Below, piece after piece: positions 1 to 60,129 of a DNA stretch of 64,000 bases (positions are counted from its first letter, which is position 1; each line of letters begins with the position of its first letter). The DNA comes from Malacoraja senta. Its lineage: Eukaryota. The position numbers and the translations under genes were made by a program. Where the stretch lies: assembly GCA_038087875.1 (NCBI GenBank), contig JAXLNO010005073.1, positions 248,001-312,000 of the forward strand. The letters run 5' to 3'. Under the pieces are notes generated by a model that searched no databases, was not told the origin of the DNA, and saw nothing but the letters and a program-made list of their open reading frames with translations.

Positions 1-239
1 ATCCTTTTAGTTCGGAGATACAGCACAGAATCAGCACAATTCCAGTTGCACCAGAAAAAAATCATCATTAAAAACCCTGGACACTTCAAATGACAACAAT
101 TGAAAGGAAAAGTCAGCAGAATTAATCAAAGAAGCAAACACAATTCAGTAGAGAGCGATGGTGTTCTCACCGACCTCATGCCCTGGAGATGTAGATCTAC
201 ATCAGACACAAGGGGAGACTCCCTGTCTCTACACTGAGC

Positions 240-1830
240 ACTGCTCCCATCCACAGCCCAGGACCACTGCTCCCATCCACAGCCCAGGACCACTGCTCCC
301 ATCCACAGCCCAGGACCACACCTCCCATCCACAGCCCAGGACCACTGCTCCCATCCACAGCCCAGGACCACTGCTCCCATCCACAGCCCAGGACCACTGC
401 TCCCATCCACAACCCAGGACCACTGCTCCCATCCACAGCCCAGGATCACTGCTCCCATCCACAGCCCAGGACCACTGCTCCCATCCACAGCCCAGGACCA
501 CTGCTCCCATCCACAGCCCAGGACCACTGCTCCCATCCACAGCCCAGGAGCACTGCTCCCACCCACAGCCCAGGACCACTGCTCCCATCCACAGCCCAGG
601 ACCACTGCTCCCATCCACAGCCCAGGTCCACTGCTCCCATCCACAGCCCAGGACCACTGCTCCCATCCACAGCCCAGGACCACTGCTCCCATCCACAACC
701 CAGGACCACTGCTCCCATCCACAGCCCAGGATCACTGCTCCCATCCACAGCCCAGGACCACTGCTCCCATCCACAGCCCAGGACCACTGCTCCCATCCAC
801 AGCCCAGGACCACTGCTCCCATCCACAGCCCAGGAGCACTGCTCCCACCCACAGCCCAGGACCACTGCTCCCATCCACAGCCCAGGACCACTGCTCCCAT
901 CCACAGCCCAGGTCCACTGCTCCCATCCACAGCCCAGGACCACTGCTCCCATCCACAGCCCAGGACCACTGCTCCCATCCACAGCCCAGGACCACTGCTC
1001 CCATCCACAGCCCAGGACCACTGCTCCCATCCACAGCCCAGGACCACTGCTCCCATCCACAGCCCAGGACCACTGCTCCCATCCACAGCCCAGGACCACT
1101 GCTCCCATCCACAGCCCAGGACCACTGCTCCCATCCACAGCCCAGGACCACTGCTCCCATCCACAGCCCAGGACCACTGCTCTCATCCACAGCCCAGGAC
1201 CACTGCTCCCATCCACAGCCCAGGACCACTGCTCCCATCCACAGCCCAGGACCACTGCTCCCAACCACAGCCCAGGACCACTGCTCCCATCCACAGCCCA
1301 GGACCACTGCTCCCATCCACAGCCCATGACCACTGCTCCCATCCACAGCCCAGGACCACTGCTCCCATCCACAGCCCAGGACCACTGCTCCCATCCAGAG
1401 CCCAGGACCACTGCTCCCATCCACAGCCCAGGACCACTGCTCCCATCCACAGCCCAGGACCACTGCTCCCATCCACAGCCCAGGACCACTGCTCCCATCC
1501 ACAGCCCAGGACCACTGCTCCCATCCACAGCCCAGGACCACTGCTCCCATCCACAGCCTAGGACCACTGCTCCCATCCACAGCCCAGGACCACTGCTCCC
1601 ATCCACAGCCCAGGACCACTGCTCCCATCCACAGCCCAGGACCACTGCTTCCATCCACAGCCCAGGACCACTGCTCCCATCCATAGCCCAGGACCACTGC
1701 TCCCATCCACAGCCCAGGACCACTGCTCCCATCCACAGCCCAGGACCACTGCTCCTCACGACAGCCCAGGACCACTGCTCCCATCCACAGCCCATGACCA
1801 CTGCTCCCATCCACAGCCCAGGACCACTGC
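240..1830. repeat. 26-bp minisatellite (CCACAGCCCAGGACCACTGCTCCCAT)n, about 60 units
   Basis: Direct reading of the tandem unit. Confidence 0.98.
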
Positions 1831-2069
1831 ACTCAGACACTCCCACAACTCCCCCTTTTATACACAGCAGCTGACAATTTTCTAATCAGCTTCAAACAAG
1901 CTGATTACCACATTAACCCTTCGCCCACCAGTGGTCAATCAATGTTTGTTGCACACATCATGATATCCACCTGGGGCAGTAGTTGTCTGCAGGACAATAA
2001 TTGCCCTCCGACTTGTTGCTTTTTACACAAAGTGGCTGCTTGCATTTCCTTAAGTCAGAGACGACACAC

Positions 2070-2520
2070 AGAAACAGAATTAGGCCATTCGGCCCATCGA
2101 GTCTACCCCACCATTCAATCATGGCTGATCTATCTCTCCCTCCTAACCCCATTCTCCTGCCTTCTCCCCATAACCCCTGACACCCGCACTCATCAACAAT
2201 CTATCTATCTCTGCCTTAAATATATCCACTGACGTGGCCTCCACCGCCATCTGTGGCAATGAATCCCACAGATTCACCACCCTCTGGCTAAAGAATTTCC
2301 TCCTCATCTCCTTCCTAAAGGAAAGTCCTTTAAATCTGAGGCTGTGCCCTCTGGTCCTAGACTCTCCCACTAGTGGAAACATCCTCTCCACATCCACTCT
2401 ATCCGGGCCTTTCACTGTTCGGTGACGTTTCAATGCTCCCCCCCCCCCAATCTTCTAAACTCCAGCGAGTACAGGCCCAGCGCCGACAAACGCTCATCGT
2501 ACGTTCACCCACTCGTTCCT
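2070..2520 (-). mobile_element. CR1 LINE 3' fragment (paralog at about 57130-57600)
   Basis: [14 protein letters not shown]...FSQRVVNLW, typical CR1 ORF2 C-terminus. Confidence 0.85.
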
Positions 2521-2704
2521 GGGATCGTCCTTGTAAACGCTAACTCTTTTGTCTTGCTGATGTTGAGGGATGGATTGTTATCCTGACCATAGGCGCAGGA
2601 GTGGGCCATTCGGCCCTTCAGGACAGAAGGTTCTCAATGTCTTTCCCATATTCTATCTCATCGTTGCTGCTCATGTGGCTGAAATAATGCCCCATCTACA
2701 CCAG

Positions 2705-3800
2705 TCCCACCCTGACCAACATGCCCCATCTACACTAGTCCCACCCCGACCAAGATGCCACATGTACACTAGTCCCACCCCGACCAACATGCCACATGTA
2801 CACTAGTCCCACCCCGACCAACATGCCCCATCTACACTAGTCCCACCGCGACGAACATGCCCCATCTACACTAGTCCCACCCCGACCAACATGCCACATC
2901 TACACTAGTCCCAGCCCGACCAACATGCCCCATCTACACTAGTCCCACCCCGACCAACATGCCCCATCTACACTAGTCCCACCCCAACCAACATGCCCGA
3001 TCTACATTAGTCCCACCCTAGACCAACATGCCCCGTATACACAAGTCCCACCCCGACCAACATGCCCCATCTACACTAGTCCCACCCGACCAACATGCCC
3101 CATCTACACTAGTCCCACCCCGACTAACATGCCCCATCTACACTAGTCCTACCCCGACCAACATGCCCCATCTACACTAGTCCCACTCCGACCAACATGC
3201 CCCATCTACACTAGTCCCACCCCGACCAACATGCCCCGTCTACACTAGTCCCACCCCGACCAACATGCCTCATCGACACTAGTCCCACCCCGACCAACAT
3301 GCCCCATCTACACTAGTCCCACCCCGACCAATATAACCCATCTACACTAGTCCCACCCCGACCAACATGCCCCATCTACACTAGTCCCACCCCGACCAAC
3401 ATGCCCCATCTACACTAATCCCACCCCGACCAACATGCCCCATCTACACTAGTCCCACCCCGACCAACATGCCCCATCTACACTAATCCCACCCCGACCA
3501 ACATGCCCCATCTACACTAATCCCACCCCGACCAATATGCCCCATCTACACTAGTCCCACCCCGGCCAACATGCCCCATCTACACTAGTCCCACCCCGAC
3601 CAACATGCCCCATCTACACTAATCCCACCCCAACAAACATGCCCCATCTACACTAGTCCCACCCCGACCAACATGCCCCATCTACACTAGTCCCACCCCG
3701 ACCAACATGCCCCATCTACACTAGTCCCACCCCGACCAACATGCCCCATCTACACTAGACCCACCCCGACCATCATGCCCCATTCTACACTAGTCCCACT
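2705..3800. repeat. 34-bp minisatellite (CCAACATGCCCCATCTACACTAGTCCCACCCCGA)n
   Basis: About 30 units; shorter paralog at 58090-58335. Confidence 0.97.
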
Positions 3801-4021
3801 TGCCCGCGTTTGACCCATATCCCTCCAAACCTGTCCTATCCAAGTGTCTCTAAAACGTTGTGATAGTCCCAGCCTCAACTACCTCCTCCGGCAGCTCATT
3901 CCATACACCCACGACCCTCTGTGTGGAGAAGTTGCCCCTCAGATTGACATTATTAATGTGAACCATTTGTGCACAACTCTGCTGGTGTGAGTAATAAATG
4001 AAATGATAGATAGCAAAAATA

Positions 4022-4312
4022 CACAGTTGTGCAGCGGTAGAGTTGCTGCCTCACAGCGCCAGAGACCCGGGTTCCATCCTCAATACGGGTGCTGTCTGTA
4101 CGGAGTTTGCACGTTCTCCCCGTGACCTGCGTGGGTTTTCTCCGGGTGCTCCGGTTTCCTTCCGCATTCGAAAGACCTGCTGGTTTGTAGGTTAATTGGC
4201 TTCTGTAAAATTGTCCCTAATGTGTGTAGGATGGAGCTAGTATACGGGGTGATCACTGGTCGGCGATGACTTGTTGGGCCGAAGGGCGTGTTTCTGCGCA
4301 GTATCTCTAAAA
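4022..4312 (+). mobile_element. tRNA-derived HE1/V-SINE-type SINE
   Basis: tRNA-like head (gcagcggtagagttgctgcctcacagcgccagagacccgggttc) and conserved core gtttgcacgttctccccgtg. Confidence 0.85.
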
Positions 4313-4682
4313 TCTAAACAATACCCGGTGACTTGGCCTCCACCGCCCTCTGTGGCAATGAATTCCACAGATTCACCACCCTCTGGCTAAAGAAATTCCT
4401 CCTCATCTCCTTTCTAAAGGCATGAGTGGGAAAGGCAGAGAGGGTGAGGGGCCAGACGTGGGCATGTGGGACTAGCTTCGATAGGCATGGCTGTGTGTTT
4501 CTGTGCTGTGGGACTGACGGGGCTACACAGGGTAGTAGTTTGATGCTTCAGCCTGCAGCAACCCAGGAGAACTGTGTTCCAGATGTTTCATTAGTTTGTT
4601 GTTCTGCACATCGATCGGGAGACGATGAAATCTCTCGTTCACACGCAGCGGCCAGAGCAAACAGTGTACATACAGTGATGAC

Positions 4683-6290
4683 CAGCCGCTCCATTCTCTC
4701 AGCATATGACAGTCCCGTCATCCCGGGAATTAACCTTGTAAACCTACGCTGCACTCCCTCAATAGCAAGAATGTCCTTCCTCATATTAGGGGACCAAAAC
4801 TGCACACAATACTCCAGGTGTGGTCTCACTAGGGCTCTGTACAAATGCAGAAGGACCTCTTTGCTCCTATATTCGATTCTTCTTGTTATAAAGGCCAACA
4901 TGCTATTCGCTTTCTTCACTGCCTGCTGTACCTGCATGCTTACTTTCATAGCCTGATGAACAAGGACCCCCAGATCCCGTTGTACTTCCCCTTTTCCCAA
5001 CTTGACACCATTTAGATAGCAATCTCCCTTCCTGTTTTTGCTACCAAAGTGGATAACCTCACATTTATCCGCATTAAACTTCATCTGCCATGCATCTGCC
5101 CACTCCCCCAACCTGTCCAAGTCACCCTGCATTCTCATTGCATCCTCCTCACAGTTTACACTGCCACCCAGCTTTGTGTCATCTGCAAATTTGCTAATGT
5201 TACTTTGAATCTCTTCATCCAAATCATTGATGTATATTGTAAATAGCTGCGGAACCAGACCGAGCCTTGCCGTACCCCAGTAGTCACTGCCTGCCATTCT
5301 GAAAGGGACCCATTAATCCCTACTCTTTGTTTCCTGTCGGCCAATCACTTCTCTATCCATGTCAGCACTCTACCCCCAATACCATTTGCCCTAATTTTGC
5401 CCACTAATCTCCTATGTGGGACCTTATCAAATGCTTTGTGAAAGTCCAGGTACACTACATCCACTGGCTCTCCCTTGTCCATTTTCCTAGTTACATCTTA
5501 AAAAAATTCCAGAAGATTGGTCAAGCATGACTTCCCCTTCGTATATCCATGCTAACTCAGACCGATCCTGTTACTGCTATCCAAATGTGCGGCTATTTCA
5601 TCTTTTATAATTGACTCCAGCATCTTCCCCACCGCCGACGTCAGGCTAACTGGTCTATAATTCCCTGTTTTCTCTCTCGCTCCTTTCTTGATAAGTGGGA
5701 TGACAGGAACTGATCCTGAATCTATTGAACATTGGAAAATGATCACCAATGCGTCCACTATTTCTAGACCCACCTCCATGAGGACCTTGGGATGCAGACC
5801 ATCAGGCCCAGGGGATTTATCATCCTTCAGTCTCATTAGACTACCCAATACTATTTCTCGCCTAATGAACATTTCTTTCAGTTCCTCTACCCCCTTAGAT
5901 CCTCTGTCCTCCAGTATTTCTGGGAGATTGTTTGAGTCTTCCTTAGTGAAGACAGATCGGAAGTACCTATTCAACTCTTCTGCCATTTCCTTGTTGCCCA
6001 TAATAATTTCACCCACATCTGCCTTCAAGGCACCCACATTTGACTTTGCTACTCTTTTTCCCTTAACATATCTAAAGAAGCTTTTACTGTCCTTCTTTAT
6101 ATTCCTGGCCAGCTTCCCTTCGTACTTCATCTTTTCAGCCCGTATTGCCCGTTTTGTTTCCTTCTGTTGTCCTATGAAAGTTTCCCAATCCTCTGGCTTC
6201 CGGCTACTCTTTGCTGTGTTGTACATCTTTTCTTTTAGTTTTATTCTATCCCAAACTTCTCTTGTCAACCACGGATGCCTCCCACTCCCC
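4683..6290 (-). mobile_element. CR1 LINE ORF2 fragment with internal deletions
   Basis: [40 protein letters not shown]. Confidence 0.93.
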
Positions 6291-6857
6291 TTAGTTGAGA
6301 AACAAATCAGGAAGTAAAACAGCCCAGAGATCAAAATAGACGAATCATTGTGGTTGAATTGCATAAAAGCTCTTAATGCAGCCTTAACCATTGCTCTGAA
6401 TTTTGCTTCAGGTCCTGAATGTGATATCAGTTTGTATGTTGGTTGCACCAAGCTTCAGTGCGTCCCTCAGCACGTTTTCCTGCAGTCTGGAGTGGGTCAA
6501 GTGGCAACATTCCCTGATGGACCACACTTTGACATATCGTTGCTTCATCCGTCAGCACAGTAACAGTGTGTGGGAGATGGGACAATGTTCCTGTCCTTAT
6601 AATCCAGCCTTTGACCCACAGTGAGCAGCACCAGAACAGAAGTATTGCAATTGAAGTTTTATCTTTAGAAACAAGAGACACTTCCTCACTCTTACATTCA
6701 ATGCCTTAGCATTGAAGGCAAGCATACCATACGCCTTCTTCACTACCGTAACTACTTGTGCTGCCACCTTCCGTGAGCTATCAACTTGGACTCCAAATGC
6801 ACTGAAGACATGTGTCTCAAACTGGCTCAGTCTAAAATTCTATGTTATTTCCCACAG

Positions 6858-6931
6858 GGAATCCACAAAATGAGGCCCAGGTTTTTCTGCAGCAGTTTGC
6901 CAGCTGGTTTGATGTTTGGTGTCTTTGTTTT
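6858..6931 (+). pseudogene. Orphan truncated copy of the leader exon
   Basis: ttatttcccacag acceptor and MRPRFFCSSLPAGLMFGVFVF, near-identical to 16156-16220; cut by an LTR-like element at about 6932. Confidence 0.75.
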
Positions 6932-16143: not shown

Positions 16144-19100
16144 AGAATGTACAAAATGAGGCCGAGGTTTCTCTGCAGCAGTTTGCCACTTGGTTTGATG
16201 TTCGGTTTCTTTGTTTTCCTGCTTCGACCAGTTTCCACACAGAGTAAGTGCTTTCTCTTCGCTGGTCACAATCACCTTGCATTAATTATCATTGTCCGTG
16301 TAAACCCGCACCCATTGTCAATCTCGCTTTACTCTCAACATCCCTGAATGTGTTGCTGCCTCATAAACCCACACCATCCTTCGTGGACCTCCATTCCACA
16401 TCCCTGAATGTGTTGCTGCCTCATAAATCCACACCATCCTTCCTGGACCTCCATTCCACATCCCTGAACGTGTTGCTGCCTCACAAATCCACGCCATCCT
16501 TGCTGGACCTCCATTCCACATCCCTGTATGTGTTGCTGCCTCACAAATCCACACCATCCTTGCTGGACCTCCATTTCTGAGCCCATCCCATCAACTCCCT
16601 CTCCTTCTCCTGCACCGACACGGTCCTTATCAAAGTCAGAAATGGCCTCCTGTGAGCTTGTTGCAGAGTTAAACTCTCCCTCCTCATCCCGCTCAGCCTC
16701 TGCAGCCTTTGACACGGTTGTCCACACCATCCTTCCCAACATCTCCTCACCACAGTCCAGGTGGGTGGAACTGCCCTCGACTTATCGATCCAGTCGCAGC
16801 CCGAGAACCACGCACAATGTCTTCACTTCACGCTCCCACAAAGTTCCTTCAAAACCAGGTGGAGTTCCTCCACTACCCCAACACAACCCCCTATCCCCAC
16901 CTACGTCTCCCTCCCTCCCACTCACTCACTTCTCTCATGTGATGAAATATCCCTGCATCAATCAGGCCAGGTTATTCCAGACCACATCTCTTCACAAACC
17001 GTGTCTTCCTCGCTGGGGTTTCCAAGGAAGATCACAACTGTCTGGAATTAAATTCAGTTCAAAATTAATGATTACAGATATGGGGTGGATGGGGAAAATG
17101 TGTTTTAAATATTAATTCTTCATTGTTCGTATTCGCAACAGCAAATAGAAATCGAATGTATTTCTTGGATAATGGAGGCGACATTGTGTTAAACGGACCG
17201 GACAATGCTGAGAAAGACACTGTTGTTGTCTGGGAATGGAAACCACACTCAGGGAAGGAAATCGGAAAATTGTCGACTTTTAGAAGAATGGGGCGCGATT
17301 GGATCAAAGTGAAGGCCGCTGGCGAGAGTAAAGTGGACTTGTACCCGGAGATGAAAGTGTATTCCCGTACCCTTGATCTGACAATTGATAAACCCACATT
17401 TAAATGGGCGGGAATTTTCACTTTGGCTCAAACAGAACCGAGAAAGCAAATCCTGAAACAATATGAAATATTTGGGATGAAAGGTGAGTGGGAGCGATAA
17501 GGATCAATAATGTTTAATTTATCTCTGTAAGTATTGTCACCTATAATGATGAGAGATGGCGGGAATTGTGAGACTTCTTCCACCCGGTGAAACGTTAAAC
17601 AACTGGGGAAGTGTTTTTGTTCATTGATTCTGTAATGATCAGCAGGGGTGATAATAGTTTGATGACTTCACTGGGAACAGCAAATCAATGAATCGACCCG
17701 CAGCGAATACCATGGTCTTCTTGCCTGCACACGGTAAGGTGATCGCGGCAAGGTGGTATGGAACCAATGTCTCCATGCAGTGGCCCCGGGTTAACACTGC
17801 TACTTAATGTTACCCTGTGACCAGGTGGATGGAAGTCCATCGCCTGTGGAACATGGGCTCTGCCATAGAGTTCACCTCTTGAGAGCAATCAGATACACCT
17901 AGGAGTGGAAATAGATGCATTTTCAACAGTTTGTGAATATTTGAAACAGAGCATGTGTAAATACAACAACACCTGAATGTTGCCGGTTCCACCTGCAGTC
18001 ACACGGTAAACAGCCGGCATTTCGCTGCGTCAATGTGAGCAGCCACGGGTGTCAGGGTTCTGAGAGCACTTGGGGAGAAGTTGTTCTGACTTTCAGCTAC
18101 GTGTCAGCTTTAAGCCCGGTTATTGGATGAACCATGACATCCGCACTCTTCTGAAGTCCAGATTCCGGGCATTCAGGTCTGGGGATGCAGTGGTCTACAA
18201 GAAGTTCAGATACGACCTTGGTAAGGCCATCAAAAGTCCAAAAGGGACTTCTGCTCCAAGCTGGAGGATGAGACGGATGTTCGGCAACTATCTTAGGGCT
18301 TGAATGCCATCACCTCCTATAAAGGCAAATTCAGGATGTAGCTCAAATGTCAGCGAAACATCACTCCCTGACGAGCTCAATGCGTTCTATGCACGCTTTG
18401 ATAGGGAGAACACCGATGTGCCTTCCCGAGCCCCCATTCGCTGTGATGGTATTTCAGTCTCAGTCACAGAGGCCGACGTCAGGAAATCCTTCAGAGGTGT
18501 GAACCCTCGATAAGCACCTGGACCTGATGGTATACCTGGTCGTGTTCTAAAAACCTGTGCGGACCAACTGGCTGGAGTTTTTACGGACATTTTCAACCTC
18601 TCACTTCTGAGGTCTGAGGTTCCCACCTGCTTTAAAAGGGCATCAATTATACCAGTGCCCAAGAAGAGTAAGGTGATGTGTCTCAATGACTATCGACCTG
18701 TGGCACTAACACCTGTGGTGATGAAGTGCTTTGAAAGGTTGATCATGGCGCAAATCAACTCCTACCTTGACAAAAACCTGGACCCACTGCCGTTGGCTTA
18801 CCGCCACAACAGATCAACGGTGGATGCGATCTCGCTGGCCCTCCACTCTGCTCTGGACCACTTGGACAACAACAACTCATATGTCAGGCTGTTATTCATT
18901 GATTACAGCTCGGCATTTAACACAATCATCCCCTCCAAGCTGGTTACCAAACTCTCAGATCTGGGTCTCTGTGCATCCCTCTGCAATTGGATCCTCGACT
19001 TCCTCATTCACAGACCATAGTCTGTTCGTTTTGGTGGAAATGTGTCAGCCTCGATAACAATCAGCACGGGAGCACCTCAAGACTGTGTGCTCAGTCCCCT

Positions 19101-22100
19101 GCTGTACTCACTCTATACTCATGAGTGCGTAGCCGGACATAGTGCGAACTCCATCATCCAGTTCGCTGACGACACCACTGTTGTGGGACAAATCACTGAT
19201 GGGGACGAGTCAGAGTATAGAAGAGAGATCGAGCAACTGTCCATATGGTGCCAGCACAATAACCTGGCCCTCAACACCAGCAAAACCAAGGAATTGATTG
19301 TGGACTTTGGAAGGGGTAGGATGGGGACCCACATTCCCGTTTATATCAACGGGTCGATGGTGGAAAGGGTCAAGAGCTTCAAATTCCTGGACGTGCATAT
19401 TTCCGAAGATCACTCGTGGTCCCAGAACACTGATGCAATTATAAAGCAAGTACATCAGCGCCTCTACTTCATGAGCAGATTACGGAGAGTCGGTTTGTCA
19501 AGGAGGACTCTCTCTAACTACTACAGGTGCACAGTAGAGAGCATGATGACCGGTTGCATCGTGGCTTGGTTCGGCAACTTGAGTGTCCAGGAGCGGAAAA
19601 AGCTACAACAAGTAGTAAACACTGCCCAGTCCATCATCGGCTCTGACCTCCCTTCCATCGAGGAGATCTATCGCAGTCGCTGCCTCAAAAAGGCTGGCAG
19701 CATCATCAAGGACCCACACCATCCTGGCCACACACTCATCTCCCCGCTACCTTTAGAGAGATTAGAGAGATTCCTTTATTTGTCATTCAGACCTTTCGGT
19801 CTGAACGAAATTTCGTTGCCTGCAGTCATACATATAATAATAAATGACAAAACACACAATAAACACAAATTAACATCCACTACAGGACCCTGAAATCTGC
19901 AACATCCAGGTTCAGGAACAGCTGCTTCCCCACAGCCATCTGGTTATTAAACACAACTTCAAACAAACTCTGAACTATAACAGCCTATTGCACTTTATCT
20001 GTTTATTTATGTGTGCATATATGTATATATATTCTATGGTACATGGACACACTGATCTGTTCTGTATTTATGCCTACAATATTCTGTTGTGCTGCAGCAA
20101 GCAAGAATGTCATTATCCCATCTGGGACTTGACCTGTACAAACCACTACTCACTCTGAATCTCATTGATCTGTTTTTCACAGTTGAGGCAAGTCCACAGA
20201 GGCCTCTGCTGGGCAGTGACGTCACACTCAGCTGCACCATCTCCAGACTCTCAGATACAGTCAGTCTTTACTGGAGACCCATGGACTCATCCCAGCAGAA
20301 CAGGAGCAACACTGATCAGATCCGCCTGGATAACACGGTCTATCTGATGGTTCAACACGTTACAGTGGGGGATGGGAAGCTGTATGTGTGTGATGTGCAG
20401 GAAAACGGAAACATTGTTCACACAAGTAATGGAGATTTTACTGTAGAGAACGGTGAGTGTAAACACCTCCCATTGGATATCAAGTAGACACTTGTATCAC
20501 GGTGCTTCTTGTAATATTATGTGCGCGCCCTGTGAAGAACTGTGGCAGTGACCAACTGCTCTCCAGTATAAAATGCTGCAATGATCAGGGAGAAGTTTAC
20601 AGAAAGTCTCTCTCTCTGTGGAGCAGCTGCCTGCTTGTCTCTGTGTGACAGACACACAGCACAGGAGGGGGATGTCTTTCTGTAACCATTCTTCAGTCAA
20701 GTATTTTGTCAGTTTATCTTGCCATCAATGCTCCAGTATCTGAGACTGAGATACTGATACAGGACTCATGTCAAAGTGTCAGATAGAAAGTGTAGTCACC
20801 ATTACAACCACCAGCACTTGCTGCTCACACTCACACTGGGGGTCCCGGCCCACACATCAGCACTGAACAACAATCCATCCCCTCTCCCCTCACTGACCCT
20901 TCTCTCCGAGTCTGGTGTTGCTTGAAGTGATTCCAACTGCTGCAGACTCTGGCTTCGGATCAGCATTCAGCTGGGAGCAGGACCCGGGAACAGGGAAGAA
21001 CAGGGAATCAATGGGTGTGAATGGGAGAGGGATGGTGGGAATAATGGGAATGAAGGGACGGGAAGACCCGACCTACTTGAAGTGCGAACCTGTCCGGGTC
21101 AGTCCCCACGCAGGCATCCTCTGGGCTGCTTCTGTCCGCAGCCTGAACCTGCACCACCTCCTGCAGACAAACTGACAGAGACATTCACCTCCCAGACCGC
21201 TCTCGGGAGTCTCCGGGAGGTTTCATTCCATCCCGGGAGATTCCCGGACAGTCGGGGTGTGGGGGCGAACCTAATGTTGAAATGTAGAGTGGAATATCCA
21301 AACTTCACTGCAATTTACTGCCGTACAGGACATTGTATTTTATAAAGATCTGATGAGTTTAGTGCGGCATTCATGAAAGATGTTACATTTGAAACTTGAT
21401 CAGCTGAACAAAACACCACGAATGTTTATAAGAATACGGTTGAGAATCTCTGTATGGCACGGTAACTGTAATACTGAAAGGAGTTATCCTCTGTCTCTCT
21501 GATACAGATTTATATAGGGAGACATACACACTTTACCGCTCCAGCACAGATCACAGTGAACTTCACCTGGTTTGTTCTGTGAGTTATGGTGATAGCTATT
21601 CCCGTGCTGAGTGGACCTGGACACCTCATCGCCTTCAACAGCAGAAAGTAATAGCATCTGCAGAACGTTCTCAGCCCATCAATGTCAAAGGGACCGACTT
21701 CAGGAATCGATTGGTGACCTCAGGGAAACCCTTCGATGGCGAGGATTTTAGTGTGAGGATTGTCCCCGTTGTGTTTCAAGATGCCGGAGTTTACGCATGT
21801 TTTCTGGAATCATATCCATTTCTCACCATTGATCTAATCACAGTGAAAGGTAGGAGACAGAATGTTGCCACTGAGTTTACTGATGAACTTATTGTTTAAA
21901 ATGTAAACAACCTGCTTGTTTCCACAGTCACAGCTGAACCGTCTGATGCAGTGACTGAGGGAGACAACGTTACCCTGACCTGCTCTGTGTCTCACGTCAC
22001 TGGGTCAATGAGACTGGTTTGGATCAATGGCGATGGCAAAAGTGTTGGAGAAAAGACACTGACTGTGGAAGAGAAATCACAGAGTCTGGTTATTCAGAAA

Positions 22101-37250: not shown

Positions 37251-37284
37251 TTGAATCTTTGGAGAAGAAAGGTTAAGGTCATGG

Positions 37285-37511
37285 TGTAGCGGAAACTGCT
37301 GGCGCACATAGATATCGAACCCGGCGTTGGGAAGCCGCGGTCACGTGACTCGGGAGGGGCTGCTGTTTTCGTGCGGTTTCGTTTTGGCGCCACAGTTGTT
37401 TTGCTGACCACCGTTGTGATCAGACGTGTATGCAGAGACCTGTTTGCTAAGGAGCGAGTGTTCAATAAAAACCGTTCAGAAAACATAGTCGTCGTTTCTG
37501 CATCCGCTAAA
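37285..37511 (+). mobile_element. Short solo LTR (Gypsy-type), 227 bp
   Basis: TGTAGCGG...CCGCTAAA termini, internal AATAAA, 4-bp TSD ATGG. Confidence 0.8.
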
Positions 37512-38255: not shown

Positions 38256-38547
38256 ATAAGTCGAAGGGTACCTCCGGCAGGGGGGTTAAATACTAGTCCC
38301 AGAGACCGGGACAGAAGATTAAATCAAAGGGAACCTCCGGCTGGGGGGTTAAGTACTAGTCCCAGAGAGTGGGACAGAAGATTAAATCGAAGGGAACCTC
38401 CGGCAGGGGGGTTAAATACTAGTCCCAGAGAGTGGGACAGAAGATGAAATCAAAGGGAACCTCCGGCAGGGGGTTAAATACTAGTCCCAGAGAGTGGGAC
38501 AGAAGATTAAATCGAAGGGAACCTCCGGCTGGGGGGTGAAATACTAG
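38256..38547. repeat. 63-bp tandem repeat x4.6 with GTCCCA-GAGAG-TGGGAC hairpin
   Basis: Unit starts at 38261, 38324, 38387, 38450, 38512. Confidence 0.95.
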
Positions 38548-40798
38548 AAAGGGACATTGAGGGTGGTCTTTGACTGTGCTGCAGTCTTTAAAAGTACATC
38601 GCTTAACAGTGAACTACTGCAAGGTCCAGTCCTTACCAACTCACTCATTGGAGTTCTCATCAAATTTAGGCAAGAACCGATTGCTTTAATGGCTGACATC
38701 AGATCGATGTTTCATCAAGTGAAAGTAGCTGGTGAACATATTGATTACCTGCGATTCTTATGGTGGCCTGAAGGGGATGTGCAGCAAGATCTTGTTGATT
38801 ACCGGATGAAAGTACATCTCTTTGGAGCCGTGTCATCTCCAAGTTGTGCGAACTTCGCTTTAAGGAAGACCGCAGAGGATAATAAAGATTATTTCCCAGA
38901 GGAGGTAATTTCCACTTTGACAAATAATTCCTACGTGGACGATTGCCCAAAATCCATATCTACTGAGCAGAAAGCAATTCAAATGGTAAAACACCTGACC
39001 TCTCTCTGCAATAAGGGAGGATTTGTACTTTCCAAGTGGATCAGCAACAATCGTGTTGTATTGGAAAGCATTCCACCAGATGACAGAGCTGAAGAAACCA
39101 AGGAGTTGGATTTAGTTAAAAACAATTTGCCAATGGAAAGGGCACTGGGACTGCACTGGTGCGTGGAAACGGATGTGTTTAAGTTTAAATTGTCGATTCA
39201 GGAGCGACCATGTACAAGAAGGGGTATATTTTCTGTGATTGGCTCAGTATACGACCCTTTGGGATTTCCTGCACCATTTACACTGCCAGCCAAGTTAATT
39301 TTACAAAATCTTTGTAAGGAAAAACTTGGATGGGATGAGAGTATAACTCAAACATCCTCGCACCGTTGGCCAGAATGGTTAACGGACTCCATAAAATTTC
39401 AAAGTTTAAGGTGGATCGGTGCATAAAGCCTAAAAACTTTGGTAAGATCAGAAGTGCACAATTGCATCATTTTTCGGATGTCAGTGAAAGTGGTTACAGG
39501 ACTGTTTCATATTAAAGACTGCAAAATGTTAGCAAAAGAGTGCATGTTGCATTCTTAATGAGAAAAGCCAGAGTGGCACCACTGAAACAAATGACGATTC
39601 CCAGAATGGAACTTACAGCAGCAGTCTTAGCTGTTAAAATTGACATAATGCTGCAAAAGGAACTACAATTTCAACTGGAAGAATCTATCTTCTGGACCGA
39701 TAGCACTACGGTTCTGAAATACATCAATAATGAAAACAAACGCTTTATGACATTTGTAGCAAATTGAGTCTCCTTTGTATTGGGAGCTACTAATGTTTCT
39801 CAATGAAGATATGTTAGCACCAAAGAAAATCCTGCGGATGAAGCCTCTAGAGGACTAACAGCAAATTGTTTTCTAAACAACAGGAGATGGATCAATGTGC
39901 CCAAGTTTCTTTGTGAACAAAGCAGAGAATGGCCAAAGCTTGAACTCGGATATGAAATCTCTGTAAATGATCCGGAAATTAAACAAAACATTTCGGTGAT
40001 TGTGATTGCTAAAGACTCATATGACACCGTGAACAATTTAATTACCCACTTTTCATCATGGAATAAATTGATAACTTCTTAAGATAAATTGATAATTGTT
40101 CTTAAAATAAAAACAAGTTTATTGCTGGCGGCTCGAGAAAGGAGACAAATTACAGAGTATCCTGGGAGAGAATCCTGATAAACGGAAAGGAGAGATTGAA
40201 GGCCAGATGCAAGTTTTTGAAGCTTCATATGACGTACAGGATTTACGTCTTGATGATGTCCTCAAGGCGGAAAATGCGATCATCTCTTTCTGTCAAAGAC
40301 AGAAATACAAAGAAGAAATATTAACATTGGAAGCTGGAGGACAGGGGGTAAAAAGAAACAGTCAATTGTACAAGCTCGACCCAGTCTGGGAGGAAGGTCT
40401 TCTGCGGATGGGTGGTCGCCTAAACAAATTGGCAATGCCCGTAAAAACTAAACATCCTATCATTCTCTCAAAGGACTTTTACATAACGACATTATTTTTA
40501 CGACATATTCAGGAACAAGTTAGACATGGAGGAAGAAATTATATGTTGTCCCAACTTGGTAACAAATATTGGGTTATCAAGACTGATTCTGCAGCATCAC
40601 GAGGTTCTTGGTTGATGGGAAGAATACTAGAAATCATGCCTCACGTTCAGGGTTTGGTGCGTATGGTACGTCTTAAAACAAAAAACTATGTTTTAATAAG
40701 ACCAATAACCAAGTTGTGTTTGCTTCTAGAAGGCGAAGGTGAAGATGGAAGAGTCGATGAAGGGCCATGATTGCGGATATATAGTGCATGCTATTTTT

Positions 40799-40873
40799 TC
40801 CTCGTTAGTATCGTGTTTAGTATCCCTGCCTGTCACGCGTTAGACCGGGGTTCAATTTGCCGACGAGGAGCCA
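40799..40873 (+). tRNA. Degenerate tRNA-Asp(GTC) copy followed by CCA, inside the BEL element
   Basis: TCCTCGTTAGTATCGTGTTTAGTATCCCTGCCTGTCACGCGTTAGACCGGGGTTCAATTTGCCGACGAGGAG-CCA; about 9-10 changes from the vertebrate tRNA-Asp I recall; acceptor stem TCCTCGT/ACGAGGA perfect. Confidence 0.85.
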
Positions 40874-41242
40874 CAGGGTTTAATTCCCTGACCTTTTGCT
40901 TTTGATATATGTATAGCCTTTATGGCCATTTTTTAAATGTTTATTAGTAATTGCCTCATTAGATACTCGGAACAATTAGGAGCCGGTATGTAGTGGCCAT
41001 TTGGCCTGTTTTGCATGGCACTGATGATGGCATGTGCCTTTAAATTTTAGACTGCCCGTTGTATTGTGGGTGGGATTTATGACGTGTTTTTAGGCGTGTT
41101 TGGAGCTTAGATGCTTGCGCAGAAGTCTAGTTTTTAGATTAGTTTGGAGAGACGATGGAGAAGGTCAATCCTTCAACCATGTCAATGTTACGGAGACACG
41201 AGGAGTTTTGTAATGTTTAAAGTTGCAAGTTGGAATTGAAGG

Positions 41243-44990: not shown

Positions 44991-44994
44991 TAGG

Positions 44995-50210: not shown

Positions 50211-50264
50211 CAGTATGCTGATTTCCCACCTCCATGCCACATTTCCCTTTTATCCTGGGTTAGC

Positions 50265-53450: not shown

Positions 53451-55089
53451 TCACACAAGAGGTTAACAACTAGTTCACGTTAACTTTCCTCAACCAAGTA
53501 CAATGTAGAACCACATTAAATTCCTCGCTGTCTTCTTAATCATAACAATTAGTCATCAACTGAAAACCAGTCTTCATAAAGTGCCCCAATTAAACACACA
53601 ATTGGACATCTATCCAGGAGACAAATTCATTCTTGCCACTGCCTTCATGAAGTAAATGGAACCACACCCAGAAATCAGTCTGAGGCTCCCAACCCAAGAT
53701 CTCACCTATCCATGTTCTCCACAGATGCTGCCTGACCCGCTGAGTTACTCCAGCACTTTGTGTCTTGTTTTGTAAACCAGCACCTGCAGTTCCTTGATTT
53801 TCATCCCAAATCTTCCCTGGTTTCAGGGCTTTTACTAAATTTAGGATCTGTGCAATGGATGCATTACGGGGAAAGGTAAAGGGTCACAGACCAACAAAGA
53901 CCCATTTTGCAGTAAAGAGCACAATATCTAATTTGTAGACAGCGCTCCCAATGTGCAATGAATTCACTAACAGGTCGCTCCAATTTGTGGTCAACACTCC
54001 CACCGTGTGGTGATCCACCGCACTGCAGGCCCGTCAAATTTGTGGTCAACACTCCCACCGTGTGGTGATCCACCGCACTGCAGGCCCGTCCAATTTGTGG
54101 TCAACACTCCCACCGTGTGGATTAAGAGAGAACTGCAGAAGCTGGAAAAATCGAAGGTAGACAAAAATGCTGGAGTAACTCAGCGGGTGAGGCAGCATCT
54201 ATGGAGAGAAGGAATAGGTGACGTTTCAGGTCGAGACCCTTCTTCAGACTGAAGTTGGGGTGGGGGAGCGGGAAAAAGGACGGAAAAGGCAGACAGAAGG
54301 CTGTGGGAGAGCTGGGAAGGGGAAGGAGGGAGAAACCACTGAAATTGGAGGATGGCAAGATGAGGCCAGTGGTGGGATCCCGTTGGAGGTGGCAATAATG
54401 TTGGAGGATTATCTGTTGTATGTGACGGCTGGTAGGGTGGAAGGTGAGGACATGGGGGACTGTGTCCTTGTTACGAGTAGGGGGGGTGGGGAGTAAGAGC
54501 AGAGCTGCGGGATATAGAGAAGACTATGATAAGAGTGCTGGAGAAACTCAGCAGATCAGGCACCATCTCTGGAGGAAAAGGATGGGTGATATTTTGGGTA
54601 AGAACCCTTCTTCTATTCCATCCCAAAATCACTTGTTTCTCCAGAGATGCTGCCTCACCCACTCAGTCACTCCAGCGATGTGTCTATCTTTGGTATAAAC
54701 CAGCATCTACAGGTCTTGGTTTCTACATTTTACATCAGCCAGATTCAATTTCAGTTGTGATAAGGTTAGGGTATCATCACTTTAGTAAAGATACATCCTT
54801 TTATTCTGACACTGTGCCCTCTGGTCCGAGACTCTCCCGCTAGTAGAAACATCATTTTAGTTCGGAGATACAGCACAGAATCAGCACAATTCCAGTTGCA
54901 CCAGAAAAAAATAACCATTAAAAACCCTGGACACTTTAAATGACAACAATTGAAAGGAAAAGTCAGCAGAATTAATCAAAGAAGCAAACACAATTCAGTA
55001 GAGAGCGATAGTGTTCTCACCGACCTCATGCCGTGGAGATGTAGATCCACATCAGACACAAGGGGAGACTCCCTGTATCTACCCTGAGC

Positions 55090-56890
55090 ACTGCTCCCAT
55101 CCACAGCCCAGGACCACTGCTCCCATCCACAGCCCAGGACCACTGCTCCCATCCACAGCCCAGGAACACTGCTCCCATCCACAGCCCAGGACCACTGCTC
55201 CCATCCACAGCCCAGGACCACTGCTCCCATCCACAGCCCAGGACCACTGCTCCCATCCACAGCCCAGGACCACTGCTCCCATCCACGCCCAGGACCACTG
55301 TCCCATCCACAACAGCCCAGGACCACTGCTCCCATCCACAGCCCAGGACCACTGCTCCCATCCACAGCCCAGGACAACTGCTCCCATCCACAGCCCAGGA
55401 CCACTGCTCCCATCCACAGCCCAGGACCACTGCTCCCATCCACAGCCCAGGACCACTGCTCCTCACGACAGCCCAGGACCACTGCTCCCATCCACAGCCC
55501 AGGACCACTGCTCCCATCCACAGCCCAGGACCACTGCTCCCATCCACAGCCCAGGACCATTGCTCCCATCCACAGCCCAGGACCACTGCTCCCATCCACA
55601 GCCAGGACCACTGCTCCCATCCACAGCCCAGGACCACTGCTCCCATCCACAGCCCAGGACCACTGCTCCCATCCACAGCCCAGGACCACTGCTCCCATCC
55701 ACAGCCCAGGACCACTGCTCCCATCCACAGCCCAGGACCACTGCTCCATCCACGGCCCAGGACCACTGTCCCATCCACAACAGCCCAGGACCACTGCTCC
55801 CATCCACAGCCCAGGACCACTGCTCCCATCCACAGCCCAGGACAACTGCTCCCATCCACAGCCCAGGACCACTGCTCCCATCCACAGCCCAGGACCACTG
55901 CTCCCATCCACAGCCCAGGACCACTGCTCCTCACGACAGCCAGGACCACTGCTCCCATCCACAGCCCAGGACCACTGCTCCCATCCACAGCCCAGGACCA
56001 CTGCTCCCACCCACAGCCCAGGACCACTGCTCCCATCCACAGCCCAGGACCACTGCTCCGCATCCACAGCCCAGGACCACTGCTCCCATCCACAACCCAG
56101 GACCACTGCTCCCATCCACAGCCCAGGACCACTGCTCCCATCCACAGCCCAGGACCACTGCTCCCATCCACAGCCCAGGACCACTGCTCCCATCCACAGC
56201 CCAGGACCACTGCTCCCATCCACAGCCCAGGACCACTGCTCCCATCCACAGCCCAGGACCACTGCTCCCATCCACAGCCCAGGACCACTGCTCCCATCCA
56301 CAGCCCAGGACCACTGCTCCCATCCACAACCCAGGACCACACCTCCCATCCACAGCCCAGGACCACTGCTCCCATCCACAGCCCAGGACCACTGCTCCCA
56401 TCCACAGCCCAGGACCACTGCTCCTCACGACAGCCCAGGACCACTGCTTCCATCCACAGCCCAGGACCACACCTCCCATCCACAGCCCAGGACCACTGCT
56501 CCCATCCACAGCCCATGACCACTGCTCCCATCCACAGCCCAGGACCACTGCTCCCATCCACAGCCCATGACCACTGCTCCCATCCACAGCCCAGGACCAC
56601 TGCTCCCATCCACAGCCCAGGACAAGTGCTCCCATCCACAGCCCATGACCACTGCTCCCATCCACAGCCCAGGACCACGGCTCACATCCACAGCCCAGGA
56701 CCACACCTCCCATCCACAGCCCAGGACCACTGCTCCCATCCACAGCCCAGGACCACTGCTCCCATCCACAGCCCAGGACCACTGCTCCCATCCACAGCCC
56801 AGGACCACTGCTCCCATCCACAGCCCAGGACCACTGCTCCCATCCACAGCCCAGGACCACTGCTCCCATCCACAGCCCAGGACAACTGCA
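55090..56890. repeat. Same 26-bp minisatellite, about 70 units
   Basis: Direct reading of the tandem unit. Confidence 0.98.
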
Positions 56891-58089
56891 CTCAGACACT
56901 CCCACAACTCCCCCTTTTATACACAGCAGCTGACAATTTCCTAATCGGCTTCAATCAAGCTGATTACCACATTCACCAATCGCCCACCAGTGCTAATCAA
57001 TGTTTGTTGCACACATCATGATATCCACCTGGGACAGTGTTTGTTTGCAGGACAATAATTGCCCTCCGACTTGTTGCTTTTTACACAAAGTGGCTGCTTG
57101 CATTTCCTTAAGTCAGAGACGACACACAGAAACAGAATTAGGCCATTCGGCCCATCGAGTCTACCCCACCATTCAATCATGGCTGATCTATCTCTCCCTC
57201 CTAACCCCATTCTCCTGCCTTCTCCCCATAACCCCTGACACCCGCACTCATCAACAATCTATCTATCTCTGCCTTAAATATATCCACTGACTTGTGGCCT
57301 CCACCGCCATCTGTGGCAATGAATCCCACAGATTCACCACCCTCTGGCTAAAGAATTTCCTCCTCATCTCCTTCCTAAAGGAAAGTCCTTTAAATCTGAG
57401 GCTGTGCCCTCTGGTCCTAGACTCTCCCACTAGTGGAAACATCCTCTCCACATCCACTCTATCCGCGCCTTTCACTGTTCGGTGACGTTTCAAGCCCCCC
57501 CCCCCCCAATCTTCTAAACTCCAGCAAGTACAGGCCCAGCGCCGACAAACGCTCATCGTACGTTCACCCACTCGTTCCTGGGATCGTTCTTGTAAACGCT
57601 AACTCTTTTGTCTTGCTGATGTTGAGGGATGGATTGTTATCCTGACCATAGGCGCAGGAGTGGGCCATTCGGCCCTTCAGGACAGAAGGTTCTCAATGTC
57701 TTTCCCATATTCTATCTCATCGTTGCTGCTCATGTGGCTGAAATAATGTTCTGACCAGTGGACGGACGTCTGGATCCCACTGGCCTGAGACCCGGCCACA
57801 AGTTGTGGGTGGCAAGGTCATGACCCCGAGGGACATTGGTGTCAAGGGTCACGGTGGAGGGAATGTTCTGACCAATTCTAACGTCTGAGAAGTGAATAGT
57901 GGTGATTTGTTAATTCATCATGGCTGAAGCAGGTGGGCTCACTTCTGACTAGACTTTACTGTGGACATTTAAACAGGAAAAGTAAACTTTCTTTATTAAC
58001 AATGAATGACCCAGAGAAAGGAGAATGTTACTCTTGGAAGTTCATAGAGTAACAGCATGGAAACAGGCCCTTCCTTCGGCCCAACTTGC

Positions 58090-58335
58090 CCACCCCGACC
58101 AACATGCCCCATCTACACTTGTCCCACCCCGACCAGCATGCCCCATCTACACTAGTCCCACCCCGATCAACATGCCCCATCTACACTAGTCCCACCCCGA
58201 CCAACATACCCCATCTACACTAGTCCCACCCCGATCAACATGCCCCATCTACACTAGTCCCACCCCGACCAACATGCCCCATCTACAATAGTCCCACCCC
58301 GACCAACATGCCCCATCTATACTAGTCCCACCTGC
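58090..58335. repeat. 34-bp minisatellite, about 7 units
   Basis: Same unit as 2705-3800. Confidence 0.95.
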
Positions 58336-58551
58336 CCGCGTTTGGCCCATATCCCTCCAAACCTGTCCTATCCAAGTGTCTCTTAAACATTGTGATAGTC
58401 CCAGCCTCAACTACCTCCTCCGGCAGCTCATTCCATACACCCACCACCCTCTGTGTGGAAAAGTTGCCCCTCAGATTGACATTATTAATGTGAACCATTT
58501 GTGCACAACTCTGCTGGTGTGAGTAATAAATGAAATGGTAGATAGCAAAAA

Positions 58552-58845
58552 TACACAGTGGTGCAGCGGTAGAGTTGCTGCCTCACAGCGCCAGAGACCC
58601 GGGTTCCATCCTGAATACGGGAGCTGTCTGTACGCAGTTTGCACGTTCTCCCCGTGACCGGCGTGGGTTTTCTCCGGGTGCTCCGGTTTCCTTCCGCATT
58701 CCAAAGACCTGCTGGTTTGTAGGTTAATTGGCTTCTGTAAAATTGTCCCTAATGTGTGTAGGATGGAGTTAGTGTACGGGGTGATCATTGGTCGGCGATG
58801 ACTCGATGTGCCGAAGGGCCTGTTTCCGTGCAGTATCTCTAAAAT
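58552..58845 (+). mobile_element. HE1/V-SINE-type SINE (duplicate of 4022-4312)
   Basis: Part of the segmental duplication. Confidence 0.85.
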
Positions 58846-60129
58846 CTAAACAATACCCGGTGACTTGGCCTCCACCGCCCTCTGTGGCAATGAATTCCAG
58901 ATTCACCACCCTCTGGCTAAAGAAATTCCTCCTCATCTCCTTTCTAAAGGCATGAGTGGGAAAGGCAGTGAGGGTGAGGGGCCAGACGTGGGCATGTGGG
59001 ACTAACTTCGATAGGCATGGCTGTGTGTTTCTGTGCTGTGGGACTGACGGGGCTCAACAGGGTAGTAGTTTGATGCTTCAGCCTGCAGCAACCCAGGAGA
59101 ACTGTGTTCCAGATGTTTCATTAGTTTGTTGTTCTGCACATCGATCGGGAGACGATGAAATCTCCCGTTCACACGCAGCCGCCAGAGCAAACAGTATACA
59201 TACAGTGATGACAAACGCAATAAATGCAATATCCAGTGCAGAACAGTGCAAGATTGTGTTGCAGAAAGCCCGGGGTTGCACGGACGAGAGGGGCCGAAGG
59301 GCATGTCGCCGGGCAGGGCGACCACCGACGCTGTGGAGTTTGCTCGCTTCCCCCTCCGTGGTGGACCGGATGCGGGTCGGGGCAGGGGAGGCGAGCTCAA
59401 CCTTCCAAGCCTCAATCCAAGCTCAGCCTTCCTCCCGCGCATCCTAGCCCCGACGGGCCGAGTGCCGTCGCCGTCCTCCCCGGACAACAACCGAGGGGAA
59501 AAACACAGACGAAACCTCTTCCAACCACCCGAATCCCTCAGGGAATGTCCCTGTCCTGTCCTGTCTTTGAAATCAAGCCGTCACAATTGTGCACGATCAG
59601 TCAGCATTATCCTTTTTTTAATATATAGACAAAAGCTGATCAAGTTCAAGTTGGTATTTATTGTCACATGGACCAATTATGGTACAGTGATATTTGAGTT
59701 ACCATACAGCCATACTGAGTAAAAAGCAACAAGACACACAGCCACATAAAATAAAATCTAACATAAACATCCACACAGCGGAATCACATTCAATGGCGGT
59801 GATGGCTGGAAGGGCCAAAGTTCTCACCACGGATGGCTGACCTGCTGAGTACTACCGGCAATTTGGAGGGGAATGGACAGGCGACGTGTCGGGTCTGGAC
59901 CCTTCTTTGGACTGATGGAGTCGGGGGAGAAAGCTGGAATAAAGAGATGCGGTTGGGACAGACTCCAGGACTTGATTAGGAGGGGGAAGTTTCCTTAATT
60001 TGAATGTCATTGGGCTGTAAGCTATGAGGTACTGTTCCTCCAGTTTGCTTGTCTACTCACTCTGCCAATGGAGGAGGCCCAGGACAGAAACATCAGTGTG
60101 GGAGTAGGAAGGGGAGTTAAAATGGTTGG

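What the first reader, a model, noticed from the sequence alone, without database searches (positions are those of the whole stretch)
1..59212. ~54.85-kb direct repeat implies a tandem array of the receptor gene
1-4682 recurs at 54851-59212 in the same orientation with about 8 differences in the first 240 nt, and with different later insertions (CR1 at 4683 in copy 1 only) and different VNTR lengths. These structural differences argue for true paralogs. One Ig gene lies between the copies. Inference: a young, possibly copy-number-variable multigene cluster, as seen for paired immune receptor families, with another gene copy expected beyond either window edge.
Basis: partly seen in the sequence, partly recalled or inferred. 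Interest (0 to 1): 0.75.

Follow-up and report, generated by a model that had tools for sequence, protein, structure and literature searches.

The report
Young 54.5-kb duplication around skate Ig-receptor gene
A 4.4-4.7 kb block really does occur twice, 54.85 kb apart, on either side of one damaged eight-Ig receptor gene in a skate. It is most likely the tail end of a recent head-to-tail duplication of a 54.5-kb segment, which is an ordinary way for immune-receptor gene clusters to grow.

Summary
The repeat is real. R1 (1-4682) matches R2 (54851-59212) in the same orientation. The parts outside the minisatellites are 97.4% identical. The 26-bp array has 61 copies in R1 and 69 in R2; the 34-bp array has 33 and 7. 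R2 also holds 340 bp that R1 lacks.

The "CR1 insertion at 4683" reading is wrong. That LINE lacks about 421 bp of its own 3' end, and homology never resumes after it. So 4682/4683 is a rearrangement junction, with 1 bp of microhomology.

Best reading (about 0.68): the window holds the end of one unit, a whole second unit (4683-59212, 54,530 bp) and then unique flank, from a young head-to-tail segmental duplication. Nothing after 59212 matches 4683 onward, so no third young unit follows on the right.

The upstream unit lies outside the window and I could not fetch it. Unverified scan notes place there a second eight-Ig gene with the same tail lesions, at offsets of 55.8-59.4 kb. I confirmed those lesions in the window's copy.

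The enclosed gene looks dead: frameshifts and a stop in one Ig exon, a stop in the tail exon, and a BEL element at its splice donor.

Copy-number variation and read depth could not be tested. The scan has noted genes of this family on other pieces of this genome, but not this duplication. The finding is ordinary and of low interest.

The parts
1..4682 (.). R1: the last 4.68 kb of the presumed upstream duplication unit, cut off on the left by the window edge
   Evidence: Matches 54851-59212 on the same strand; 97.4% identity outside the minisatellites
239..1830 (.). 26-bp C-rich minisatellite in R1, 61.2 copies
   Evidence: TRF, 97% matches. Against the R2 array it is 97.9% identical, with a net excess of eight units in R2 spread over several indels
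2075..2480 (-). Old LINE 3'-end fragment inside R1, also present in R2
   Evidence: 68-72% identical to other LINE 3' ends in the window. It lies inside the 98.2%-identical R1/R2 block 1831-2686 / 56890-57748, so it predates the duplication
2687..3799 (.). 34-bp minisatellite in R1, 32.7 copies
   Evidence: TRF. The unit derives from a SINE-like element
4682..4683 (.). Rearrangement junction: the end of R joined to an internal point of a LINE, with 1 bp (C) of microhomology
   Evidence: Four-way alignment. Left of the junction R1 matches R2; right of it R1 matches LINE copies at 53139 and 26333, and both of those continue leftwards with their own LINE sequence
4683..6427 (-). LINE fragment (CR1-like; clade not tested) lacking about 421 bp of its 3' end; first element of unit 2
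   Evidence: RVT_1 hit in ORF 4551-5312. 4690-6124 matches 44001-42546 of a LINE that ends at 44429; 4682-4996 matches 53139-53452 at 93%
6429..6931 (+). Orphan copy of the promoter-proximal and 5'-end region of a family gene
   Evidence: 90.9% identical to L. erinacea L004 9557-10062 (that gene model starts at 10001). 6826-6931 matches 16111-16217 in the window at 84%
16147..37771 (+). Eight-Ig-domain receptor gene ('gene B'): leader, 8 Ig exons, TM exon 34446-34553, first tail exon 37668-37771. Apparently disabled
   Evidence: Ig Pfam hits; tblastn to skate and shark family proteins. Frameshifts and a stop in the fifth Ig exon, 23181-23540. TAA at 37737-37739 where a L. erinacea homolog has Tyr
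37772..41242 (+). BEL/Pao LTR retroelement starting at the tail exon's splice donor
   Evidence: LTRs 37772-38025 and 40989-41242 are 97.2% identical. Peptidase_A17, RVT_1 and DUF5641 hits
54851..59212 (.). R2: the end of the complete unit 2
   Evidence: Same as for R1
55089..56889 (.). 26-bp minisatellite in R2, 69.2 copies
   Evidence: TRF
57749..58088 (.). 340 bp present only in R2. Its last ~45 bp are the head of the SINE-like element from which the 34-bp array grew, so R2 keeps the ancestral state and R1 has a deletion
   Evidence: Alignment with four other copies of the element
58089..58332 (.). 34-bp minisatellite in R2, 7.2 copies
   Evidence: TRF
59213..64000 (.). Z: flank unrelated to the start of unit 2. 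No Ig exons or Pfam domains found; transposon fragments and a GC-rich stretch
   Evidence: Sensitive BLAST against 4001-14000 gives only transposon pieces at 77-92% identity. No Pfam hits. No significant tblastn hits to family proteins there

Best explanation
The window shows the right-hand part of a young head-to-tail (tandem) segmental duplication inside a skate cluster of eight-Ig receptor genes. The duplicated unit runs from an internal point of a LINE (window 4683) to the end of the R block (window 59212), 54,530 bp in this copy. It carries one receptor gene, a BEL element and much transposon debris. The window therefore holds the last 4.68 kb of unit 1 (R1), the new junction (4682/4683), the whole of unit 2 ending in R2, and then the original downstream flank Z. 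The junction joins unrelated sequences with 1 bp of microhomology, so the event was a non-homologous one (end joining or replication template switching), not unequal crossing-over between repeats (inferred). Since the duplication the copies have gained 2.6% substitutions, both minisatellites have changed length, and R1 has lost 340 bp. Shown here: the repeat, its sharp right end, the truncated LINE at the junction, the lack of homology beyond R2, and the lesions in the gene. Inferred: that unit 1 continues upstream for about 50 kb with a second gene copy.
For: R1 and R2 are co-oriented and 97.4% identical outside the minisatellites. They share older nested transposon fragments at the same positions, so they are duplicated host DNA, not an element of their own. 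The LINE at 4683 lacks about 421 bp of its 3' end. A LINE inserts 3'-end first, so this is a breakpoint and not an insertion. R2 is followed by unrelated DNA, as expected at the end of the last unit. The gene in unit 2 has TAA in place of a conserved Tyr in its first tail exon, and a BEL LTR starts at that exon's splice donor. Unverified scan notes describe the same set upstream: an eight-Ig gene, its internal four-exon duplication, a tail exon with Tyr changed to stop and cut by BEL, and a BEL tRNA-Asp copy. Their mutually consistent offsets are 55.8-59.4 kb. The notes also place a CR1 about 5.8 kb before R1, which could account for the extra length there. BEL LTR divergence (2.8%) is about the same as R1/R2 divergence (2.6%), which is compatible with BEL inserting before the duplication. 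In L. erinacea, same-strand paralogs LOC129701495 and LOC129701493 start about 60.5 kb apart, so units of this size are normal for the cluster.
Against: Unit 1 beyond R1 lies outside the window, and I could not fetch it: no protein on record is identical to a product of this window. All evidence for a duplicated gene copy comes from AI scan notes I could not check. Their coordinates need the reading 'distance from the finding's end to the window start'. I chose that reading because it makes the notes consistent with one another. Read evidence failed. From the window alone, a duplication of the R block only cannot be excluded.
Confidence: 0.68

Rival explanations
1. Only the R block (about 4.7 kb or somewhat more) was duplicated and placed about 50 kb away, a dispersed local duplication. 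The receptor gene between the copies would then be single-copy at this level of identity.
For: Only 4.4-4.7 kb of homology is visible in the window. Homology ends sharply on the right with different neighbours in each copy.
Against: It does not explain the scan notes of a second gene upstream with the same BEL-cut, stop-bearing tail exon at matching offsets. It also needs a separate event to remove the LINE's 3' end at the junction.
Confidence: 0.15
2. R1 and R2 are two insertions of one interspersed repeat family, a large transposon or composite element with internal minisatellites. The sharp right end would then be the element's terminus.
For: A common terminus with unrelated right flanks is what two independent insertions would show. 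Short contigs from public runs cover the R2 start at high summed depth. About half the sampled words of 3800-4682 occur in runs of many organisms.
Against: R has no coding capacity or structural hallmarks, and it carries older LINE and SINE fragments at identical positions in both copies. The widely shared words are explained by those embedded fragments. The unique parts of R have no match in about 320 kb of homologous skate loci. A transposon insertion would not remove the 3' end of the neighbouring LINE. Two same-strand copies within 55 kb would be improbable for a rare family.
Confidence: 0.08
3. Assembly artefact: two haplotypes, or a mis-join, placed in series, so the organism has one copy.
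For: Immune clusters are hard to assemble. I have no read support for either junction.
Against: The window has no N at all. The copies differ by 2.6% plus several structural changes. Their right flanks are unrelated, which alleles would not be. About 50 kb of other sequence separates them.
Confidence: 0.05

Closest known systems
Head-to-tail segmental duplications in IgSF immune-receptor clusters, such as primate KIR/LILR in the leukocyte receptor complex, chicken CHIR and teleost NITR/LITR (from general knowledge)
   Same: An Ig-domain receptor gene sits inside a large direct duplication. The long, highly similar direct repeats are a substrate for unequal crossing-over. Old (about 12-13% diverged) and young (2.6%) layers of duplication coexist, with dead copies among them, as in birth-and-death evolution.
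   Different: Only two units are indicated, and only one and a bit are seen. The unit is about 54.5 kb and mostly transposon debris. The copy in the window looks non-functional. Copy-number variation and activating/inhibitory pairing were not tested.
The eight-Ig 'uncharacterized protein' cluster of Leucoraja erinacea (LOC129701489, 493, 495, 496 and 498 on CM054017.1, 15.39-16.04 Mb)
   Same: Same gene family and exon layout. The window's gene region is collinear with LOC129701493 and LOC129701495 through introns and upstream DNA, at about 87-88% identity. Same-strand neighbours lie about 60 kb apart.
   Different: None of the fetched skate loci is the window itself (best identity in single-copy DNA is about 91-94%). 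None holds the R block or the BEL insertion. LOC129701493 keeps Tyr and the further tail exons.
Tandem duplications with microhomology junctions, from non-homologous end joining or replication template switching (FoSTeS/MMBIR; general knowledge)
   Same: A novel junction joins the unit's end to an unrelated internal point of a LINE, with 1 bp shared.
   Different: The other end of the event, the intact LINE at the start of unit 1, was not seen, so the class of event is inferred.
Skate MDIR receptor cluster (mentioned in scan note s1-140192; not examined here)
   Same: A clustered, recently duplicated IgSF receptor family in the same genome.
   Different: A different family with a six-domain ectodomain, on another piece of the genome.

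Membership tests
Head-to-tail (tandem) segmental duplication | Two copies in the same orientation with high identity | tested here: met
   R1/R2 on the same strand, 97.4% identical outside the minisatellites
Head-to-tail (tandem) segmental duplication | A novel junction where the unit's end abuts the unit's start, while the last copy abuts the original flank | tested here: met
   The end of R is joined to an internal LINE position at 4682/4683. The same R end is joined to unrelated DNA at 59212/59213
Head-to-tail (tandem) segmental duplication | Homology over the whole unit (unit 1 collinear with 4683-54850) | not testable with these tools
   Unit 1 lies outside the window. No locus of this genome could be fetched. 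Only unverified scan notes bear on it
Tandem array of three or more units | A further unit follows R2 | tested here: not met
   59213-64000 has no homology to 4683-9470
Interspersed transposable element | Own coding capacity or structural hallmarks, and no host-like nested debris shared by the copies | tested here: not met
   No domains in R other than an old LINE fragment. Old LINE and SINE fragments are shared at identical positions
Interspersed transposable element | Many dispersed copies in the genome | tested here: inconclusive
   No copy of the unique parts of R in about 320 kb of related skate loci. Run and word data are confounded by the embedded transposon pieces
False haplotypic duplication | Half read depth over each copy; copies next to gaps; allelic flanks | tested here: inconclusive
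   No N in the window and the right flanks are unrelated, both arguing against. Depth could not be measured
Clustered multigene IgSF receptor family | Several paralogs close together on one chromosome | tested here: met
   In L. erinacea, five family genes lie at 15.39-16.04 Mb of CM054017.1. In the window there is one gene plus an orphan 5'-end fragment
Paired activating/inhibitory receptor family | Copies with a charged TM residue alongside copies with ITIM tails | not tested
   Outside this finding. The window's copy has a stop before the tail tyrosine motif

The most novel reading that the evidence does not exclude
The right breakpoint may lie inside the receptor gene's long last intron. 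The duplication would then have copied only the 5' part of the gene (Ig exons, TM exon, first tail exon) and left a single set of terminal ITIM-type tail exons downstream of R2. A scan note places such exons about 9.6 kb beyond the window end. That arrangement would produce a tail-less upstream copy, or read-through 16-Ig transcripts. The two 54.5-kb direct repeats would also make the locus copy-number variable between individuals.
Probability: 0.1. Interest if true: 0.4.

Novelty: new member of a known kind. Interest (0 to 1): 0.2.

Why it matters
It adds one dated, junction-resolved example of how a cartilaginous-fish immune-receptor cluster grows: a non-homologous duplication of about 54.5 kb, laid over older paralogs that are about 12-13% diverged. 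It also gives a junction (R end joined to a truncated LINE at 4682/4683) that can be assayed by PCR for presence or absence between individuals. It does not change what is known about such clusters. The copy in view seems to be a pseudogene, so functional consequences are doubtful.

Tried and rejected
1. Fetching the flanks. I searched the protein collections with an Ig exon and two family proteins and fetched eight skate loci. None is the window's genome region; the best identity in single-copy DNA is 91-94%. No protein on record matches the window's exons at more than 92%. The upstream unit therefore could not be read.

2. Read evidence. Two run searches found only small runs holding 0.3-0.77 of the sampled words. 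Laying four of them on 49100-55088 gave only transposon-like contigs of 100-300 nt at huge summed depth, and 8 raw reads. That gave no information on depth, on paralogous variants left of 54851, or on junctions.

3. Unequal crossing-over between LINEs as the mechanism: rejected. Z does not begin with the matching LINE. The fragment at 60380-60914 is only 87% identical and out of register.

4. The old LINE 3' fragment at 2075-2480 as the missing 3' end of the LINE at 4683, split by an insertion: rejected. It is about 72% identical to the 3' module of the copy that matches the 4683 LINE at 93%.

5. The minisatellite ORFs (up to 658 aa, Pro/Ser/Thr-rich) as coding: rejected. The 26-bp unit is not a multiple of three, so each unit gained or lost shifts the frame. 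All six frames are open simply because the unit has no stop triplets.

7. Two literature searches found nothing specific to this family or locus.
Full report
**Observation.** The window has no N. A self-comparison shows that 1-4682 (R1) recurs at 54851-59212 (R2) on the same strand. The blocks are 1-1827/54851-56678 (96.2%), 236-2689/55293-57748 (96.5%) and 3556-4682/58089-59212 (96.0%), all at E = 0. Outside the two minisatellites, a global alignment gives 1920 matches and 52 mismatches (97.4%), with a few 1-2 bp gaps and 9 mismatches in the first 238 nt. The 26-bp minisatellite has 61.2 copies in R1 and 69.2 in R2. The 34-bp one has 32.7 and 7.2. The 26-bp arrays align at 97.9%, with a net excess of eight units in R2 spread over several indels. 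R2 also has 340 bp (57749-58088) that R1 lacks. Its end is the head of a SINE-like element from which the 34-bp array grew, so R2 keeps the older state and R1 has a deletion. Both copies hold the same old LINE and SINE fragments at the same positions. They are therefore duplicated host DNA, and the copies are truly diverged paralogs.

**The right end.** Homology stops at 4682/59212. It is not. 4690-6124 matches 44001-42546 of a LINE that runs on to 44429. 4682-4996 matches 53139-53452 at 93%, and that copy continues for about 427 bp with the normal 3' module. In a four-way alignment, both other LINE copies run on leftwards past the point where R1 switches to R sequence. LINEs insert 3'-end first, so a copy without its 3' end marks a later breakpoint. 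The junction shares one base (C). After the LINE fragment (to about 6427), nothing in 4001-14000 matches 58501-64000 except transposon pieces at 77-92% identity. So homology does not resume.

**What lies between and beside the copies.**
- One eight-Ig receptor gene lies on the + strand: leader at about 16147, Ig exons at 17147-27993, TM exon at 34446-34553, first tail exon at 37668-37771.
- The fifth Ig exon needs frame changes and holds a stop.
- The tail exon has TAA at 37737-37739. L. erinacea LOC129701493 reads ...ESHLYGNPDEIQQMA there, against ESQL*GNLEEIQQMA in the window.
- A BEL/Pao element starts exactly at that exon's splice donor. Its LTRs, 37772-38025 and 40989-41242, are 97.2% identical.
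- The further tail exons of the L. erinacea gene were not found anywhere in the window.
- The rest of 4683-54850 is LINE copies, repeats, an orphan promoter/5'-end fragment (6429-6931) and no other recognisable gene.
- 59213-64000 has no Ig exon or Pfam domain.

**Family and cluster.** The gene belongs to an unnamed family of 'uncharacterized' eight-Ig proteins of skates, rays and sharks. In L. erinacea, five members lie at 15.39-16.04 Mb of CM054017.1. LOC129701495 and LOC129701493 are on the same strand and start about 60.5 kb apart. The window's gene region is collinear with both, introns and upstream DNA included, at about 87-88% identity. The two L. erinacea genes are about 86% identical to each other. 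The window's gene is thus one more lineage of an old layer of duplication, and R1/R2 (2.6% diverged) belong to a much younger layer. None of the fetched loci contains R or the BEL insertion.

**Explanation.** The simplest model that fits the junction is a head-to-tail duplication of the segment 4683-59212 (54,530 bp). Its end (R) would be joined to its start (inside a LINE) at 4682/4683, while the last copy keeps the original flank at 59212/59213. The window then holds the end of unit 1, all of unit 2 and the flank. A junction between unrelated sequences with 1 bp shared points to end joining or template switching, not to crossing-over between repeats; this step is inferred.

The model predicts an upstream unit with a second gene copy. 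I could not read that DNA. Scan notes (AI notes, unchecked) report the following before the window:
- an eight-Ig gene of 18,057 letters, described by a follow-up as probably dead;
- that gene's internal four-exon duplication;
- a tail exon whose Tyr codon is a stop and which is cut by a BEL insertion;
- a tRNA-Asp copy in a BEL element;
- a CR1 about 5.8 kb before the window start.

If 'N letters before' is read as the gap between a finding's end and the window start, these features lie 55.8-59.4 kb from their counterparts in the window, in the same order. That is the only reading that makes the notes mutually consistent. The CR1 could account for the roughly 4.6 kb by which the spacing shrinks again before R. 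I confirmed here that the window's copy has the Tyr-to-stop change and the BEL at the donor. Two copies sharing both lesions would mean the whole unit was duplicated after the tail was already damaged. BEL LTR divergence (2.8%) is compatible with that order. I put this model at about 0.68.

**Rivals.**
- A duplication of R alone (0.15) fits what is visible in the window, but not the notes.
- Two insertions of a repeat family (0.08) would explain the sharp end. However, R looks like host DNA with nested debris, has no hallmarks of an element, and the neighbouring LINE is truncated.
- An assembly artefact (0.05) is unlikely given gap-free sequence, 2.6% divergence, structural differences and unrelated right flanks. 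Depth could not be tested: the available runs gave only short transposon-like contigs, and 8 raw reads were laid.

**Verdict.** This is a young, probably tandem, duplication in a clustered receptor family, with a likely second copy upstream. It does not continue to the right. Only two units are indicated, the gene in view is apparently dead, and copy-number variation is untested. This is the normal way such clusters evolve, so interest is low. The scan has already described genes of this family on other pieces of this genome (notes listed), but not this duplication.

Noticed in passing
window 23181-23540: The fifth Ig exon of the receptor gene reads correctly only with frame changes (around 23260, 23410 and 23450), and it contains a stop in the main frame. 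This is either a pseudogene lesion or local sequence error.
   Followed up: partly
window 37668-37775: The first cytoplasmic exon has TAA where homologs have the Tyr of a YxNxxEI-like motif. A BEL LTR begins at the splice donor. The later tail exons seen in L. erinacea LOC129701493 are absent from the window.
   Followed up: yes
window 6429-6931: An orphan copy of the promoter-proximal region and the first ~60 nt of a family gene: 90.9% identical to the region in front of L. erinacea LOC129701498, and 84% to the window gene's own 16111-16217. It breaks off at 6931, and no exons follow.
   Followed up: partly
window 9266-12156: This stretch is homologous, at about 90%, to the upstream region of L. 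erinacea LOC129701496 (L002 4-8914) but inverted relative to the gene. In LOC129701495 (L008 3681-10252) the matching upstream DNA is collinear with window 10669-16395.
   Followed up: no
window 40799-40870: The tRNA-like piece in the BEL element noted by the scan is not called by ARAGORN. It scores 22.5 bits against Rfam tRNA, below the gathering score of 29 (E = 0.016 on 281 bases). It is a decayed copy at best.
   Followed up: yes
window 38029-38255 and 44439-44664: The 227 bp just inside the BEL 5' LTR recur (94.7%) directly after the LINE at 41592-44429. This suggests a second, partial BEL interior split by that LINE.
   Followed up: no
window 51957-52711 and 53703-54452: A local direct duplication of about 750 bp at 90% identity, 1.75 kb apart, just left of R2. 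Each copy contains a 55-bp tandem repeat.
   Followed up: no
window 7425-7856: A GC-rich 84-bp (42+42) minisatellite of about 5 copies lies between the orphan promoter fragment and the inverted block.
   Followed up: no
L006 and L007 (Rhinoraja longicauda JBLLEK010000536.1 and JBLLEK010000558.1): Two unplaced contigs of about 75-77 kb encode the identical 900-aa family protein and give near-identical BLAST patterns. They are probably two haplotype copies of one locus in that assembly.
   Followed up: no
window 239-1830 and 55089-56889: The 26-bp minisatellite is open in all six frames, with ORFs up to 658 aa that look like a Pro/Ser/Thr-rich 26-aa repeat. This follows from a unit without stop triplets. 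Because 26 is not a multiple of 3, it is not credible coding sequence.
   Followed up: partly
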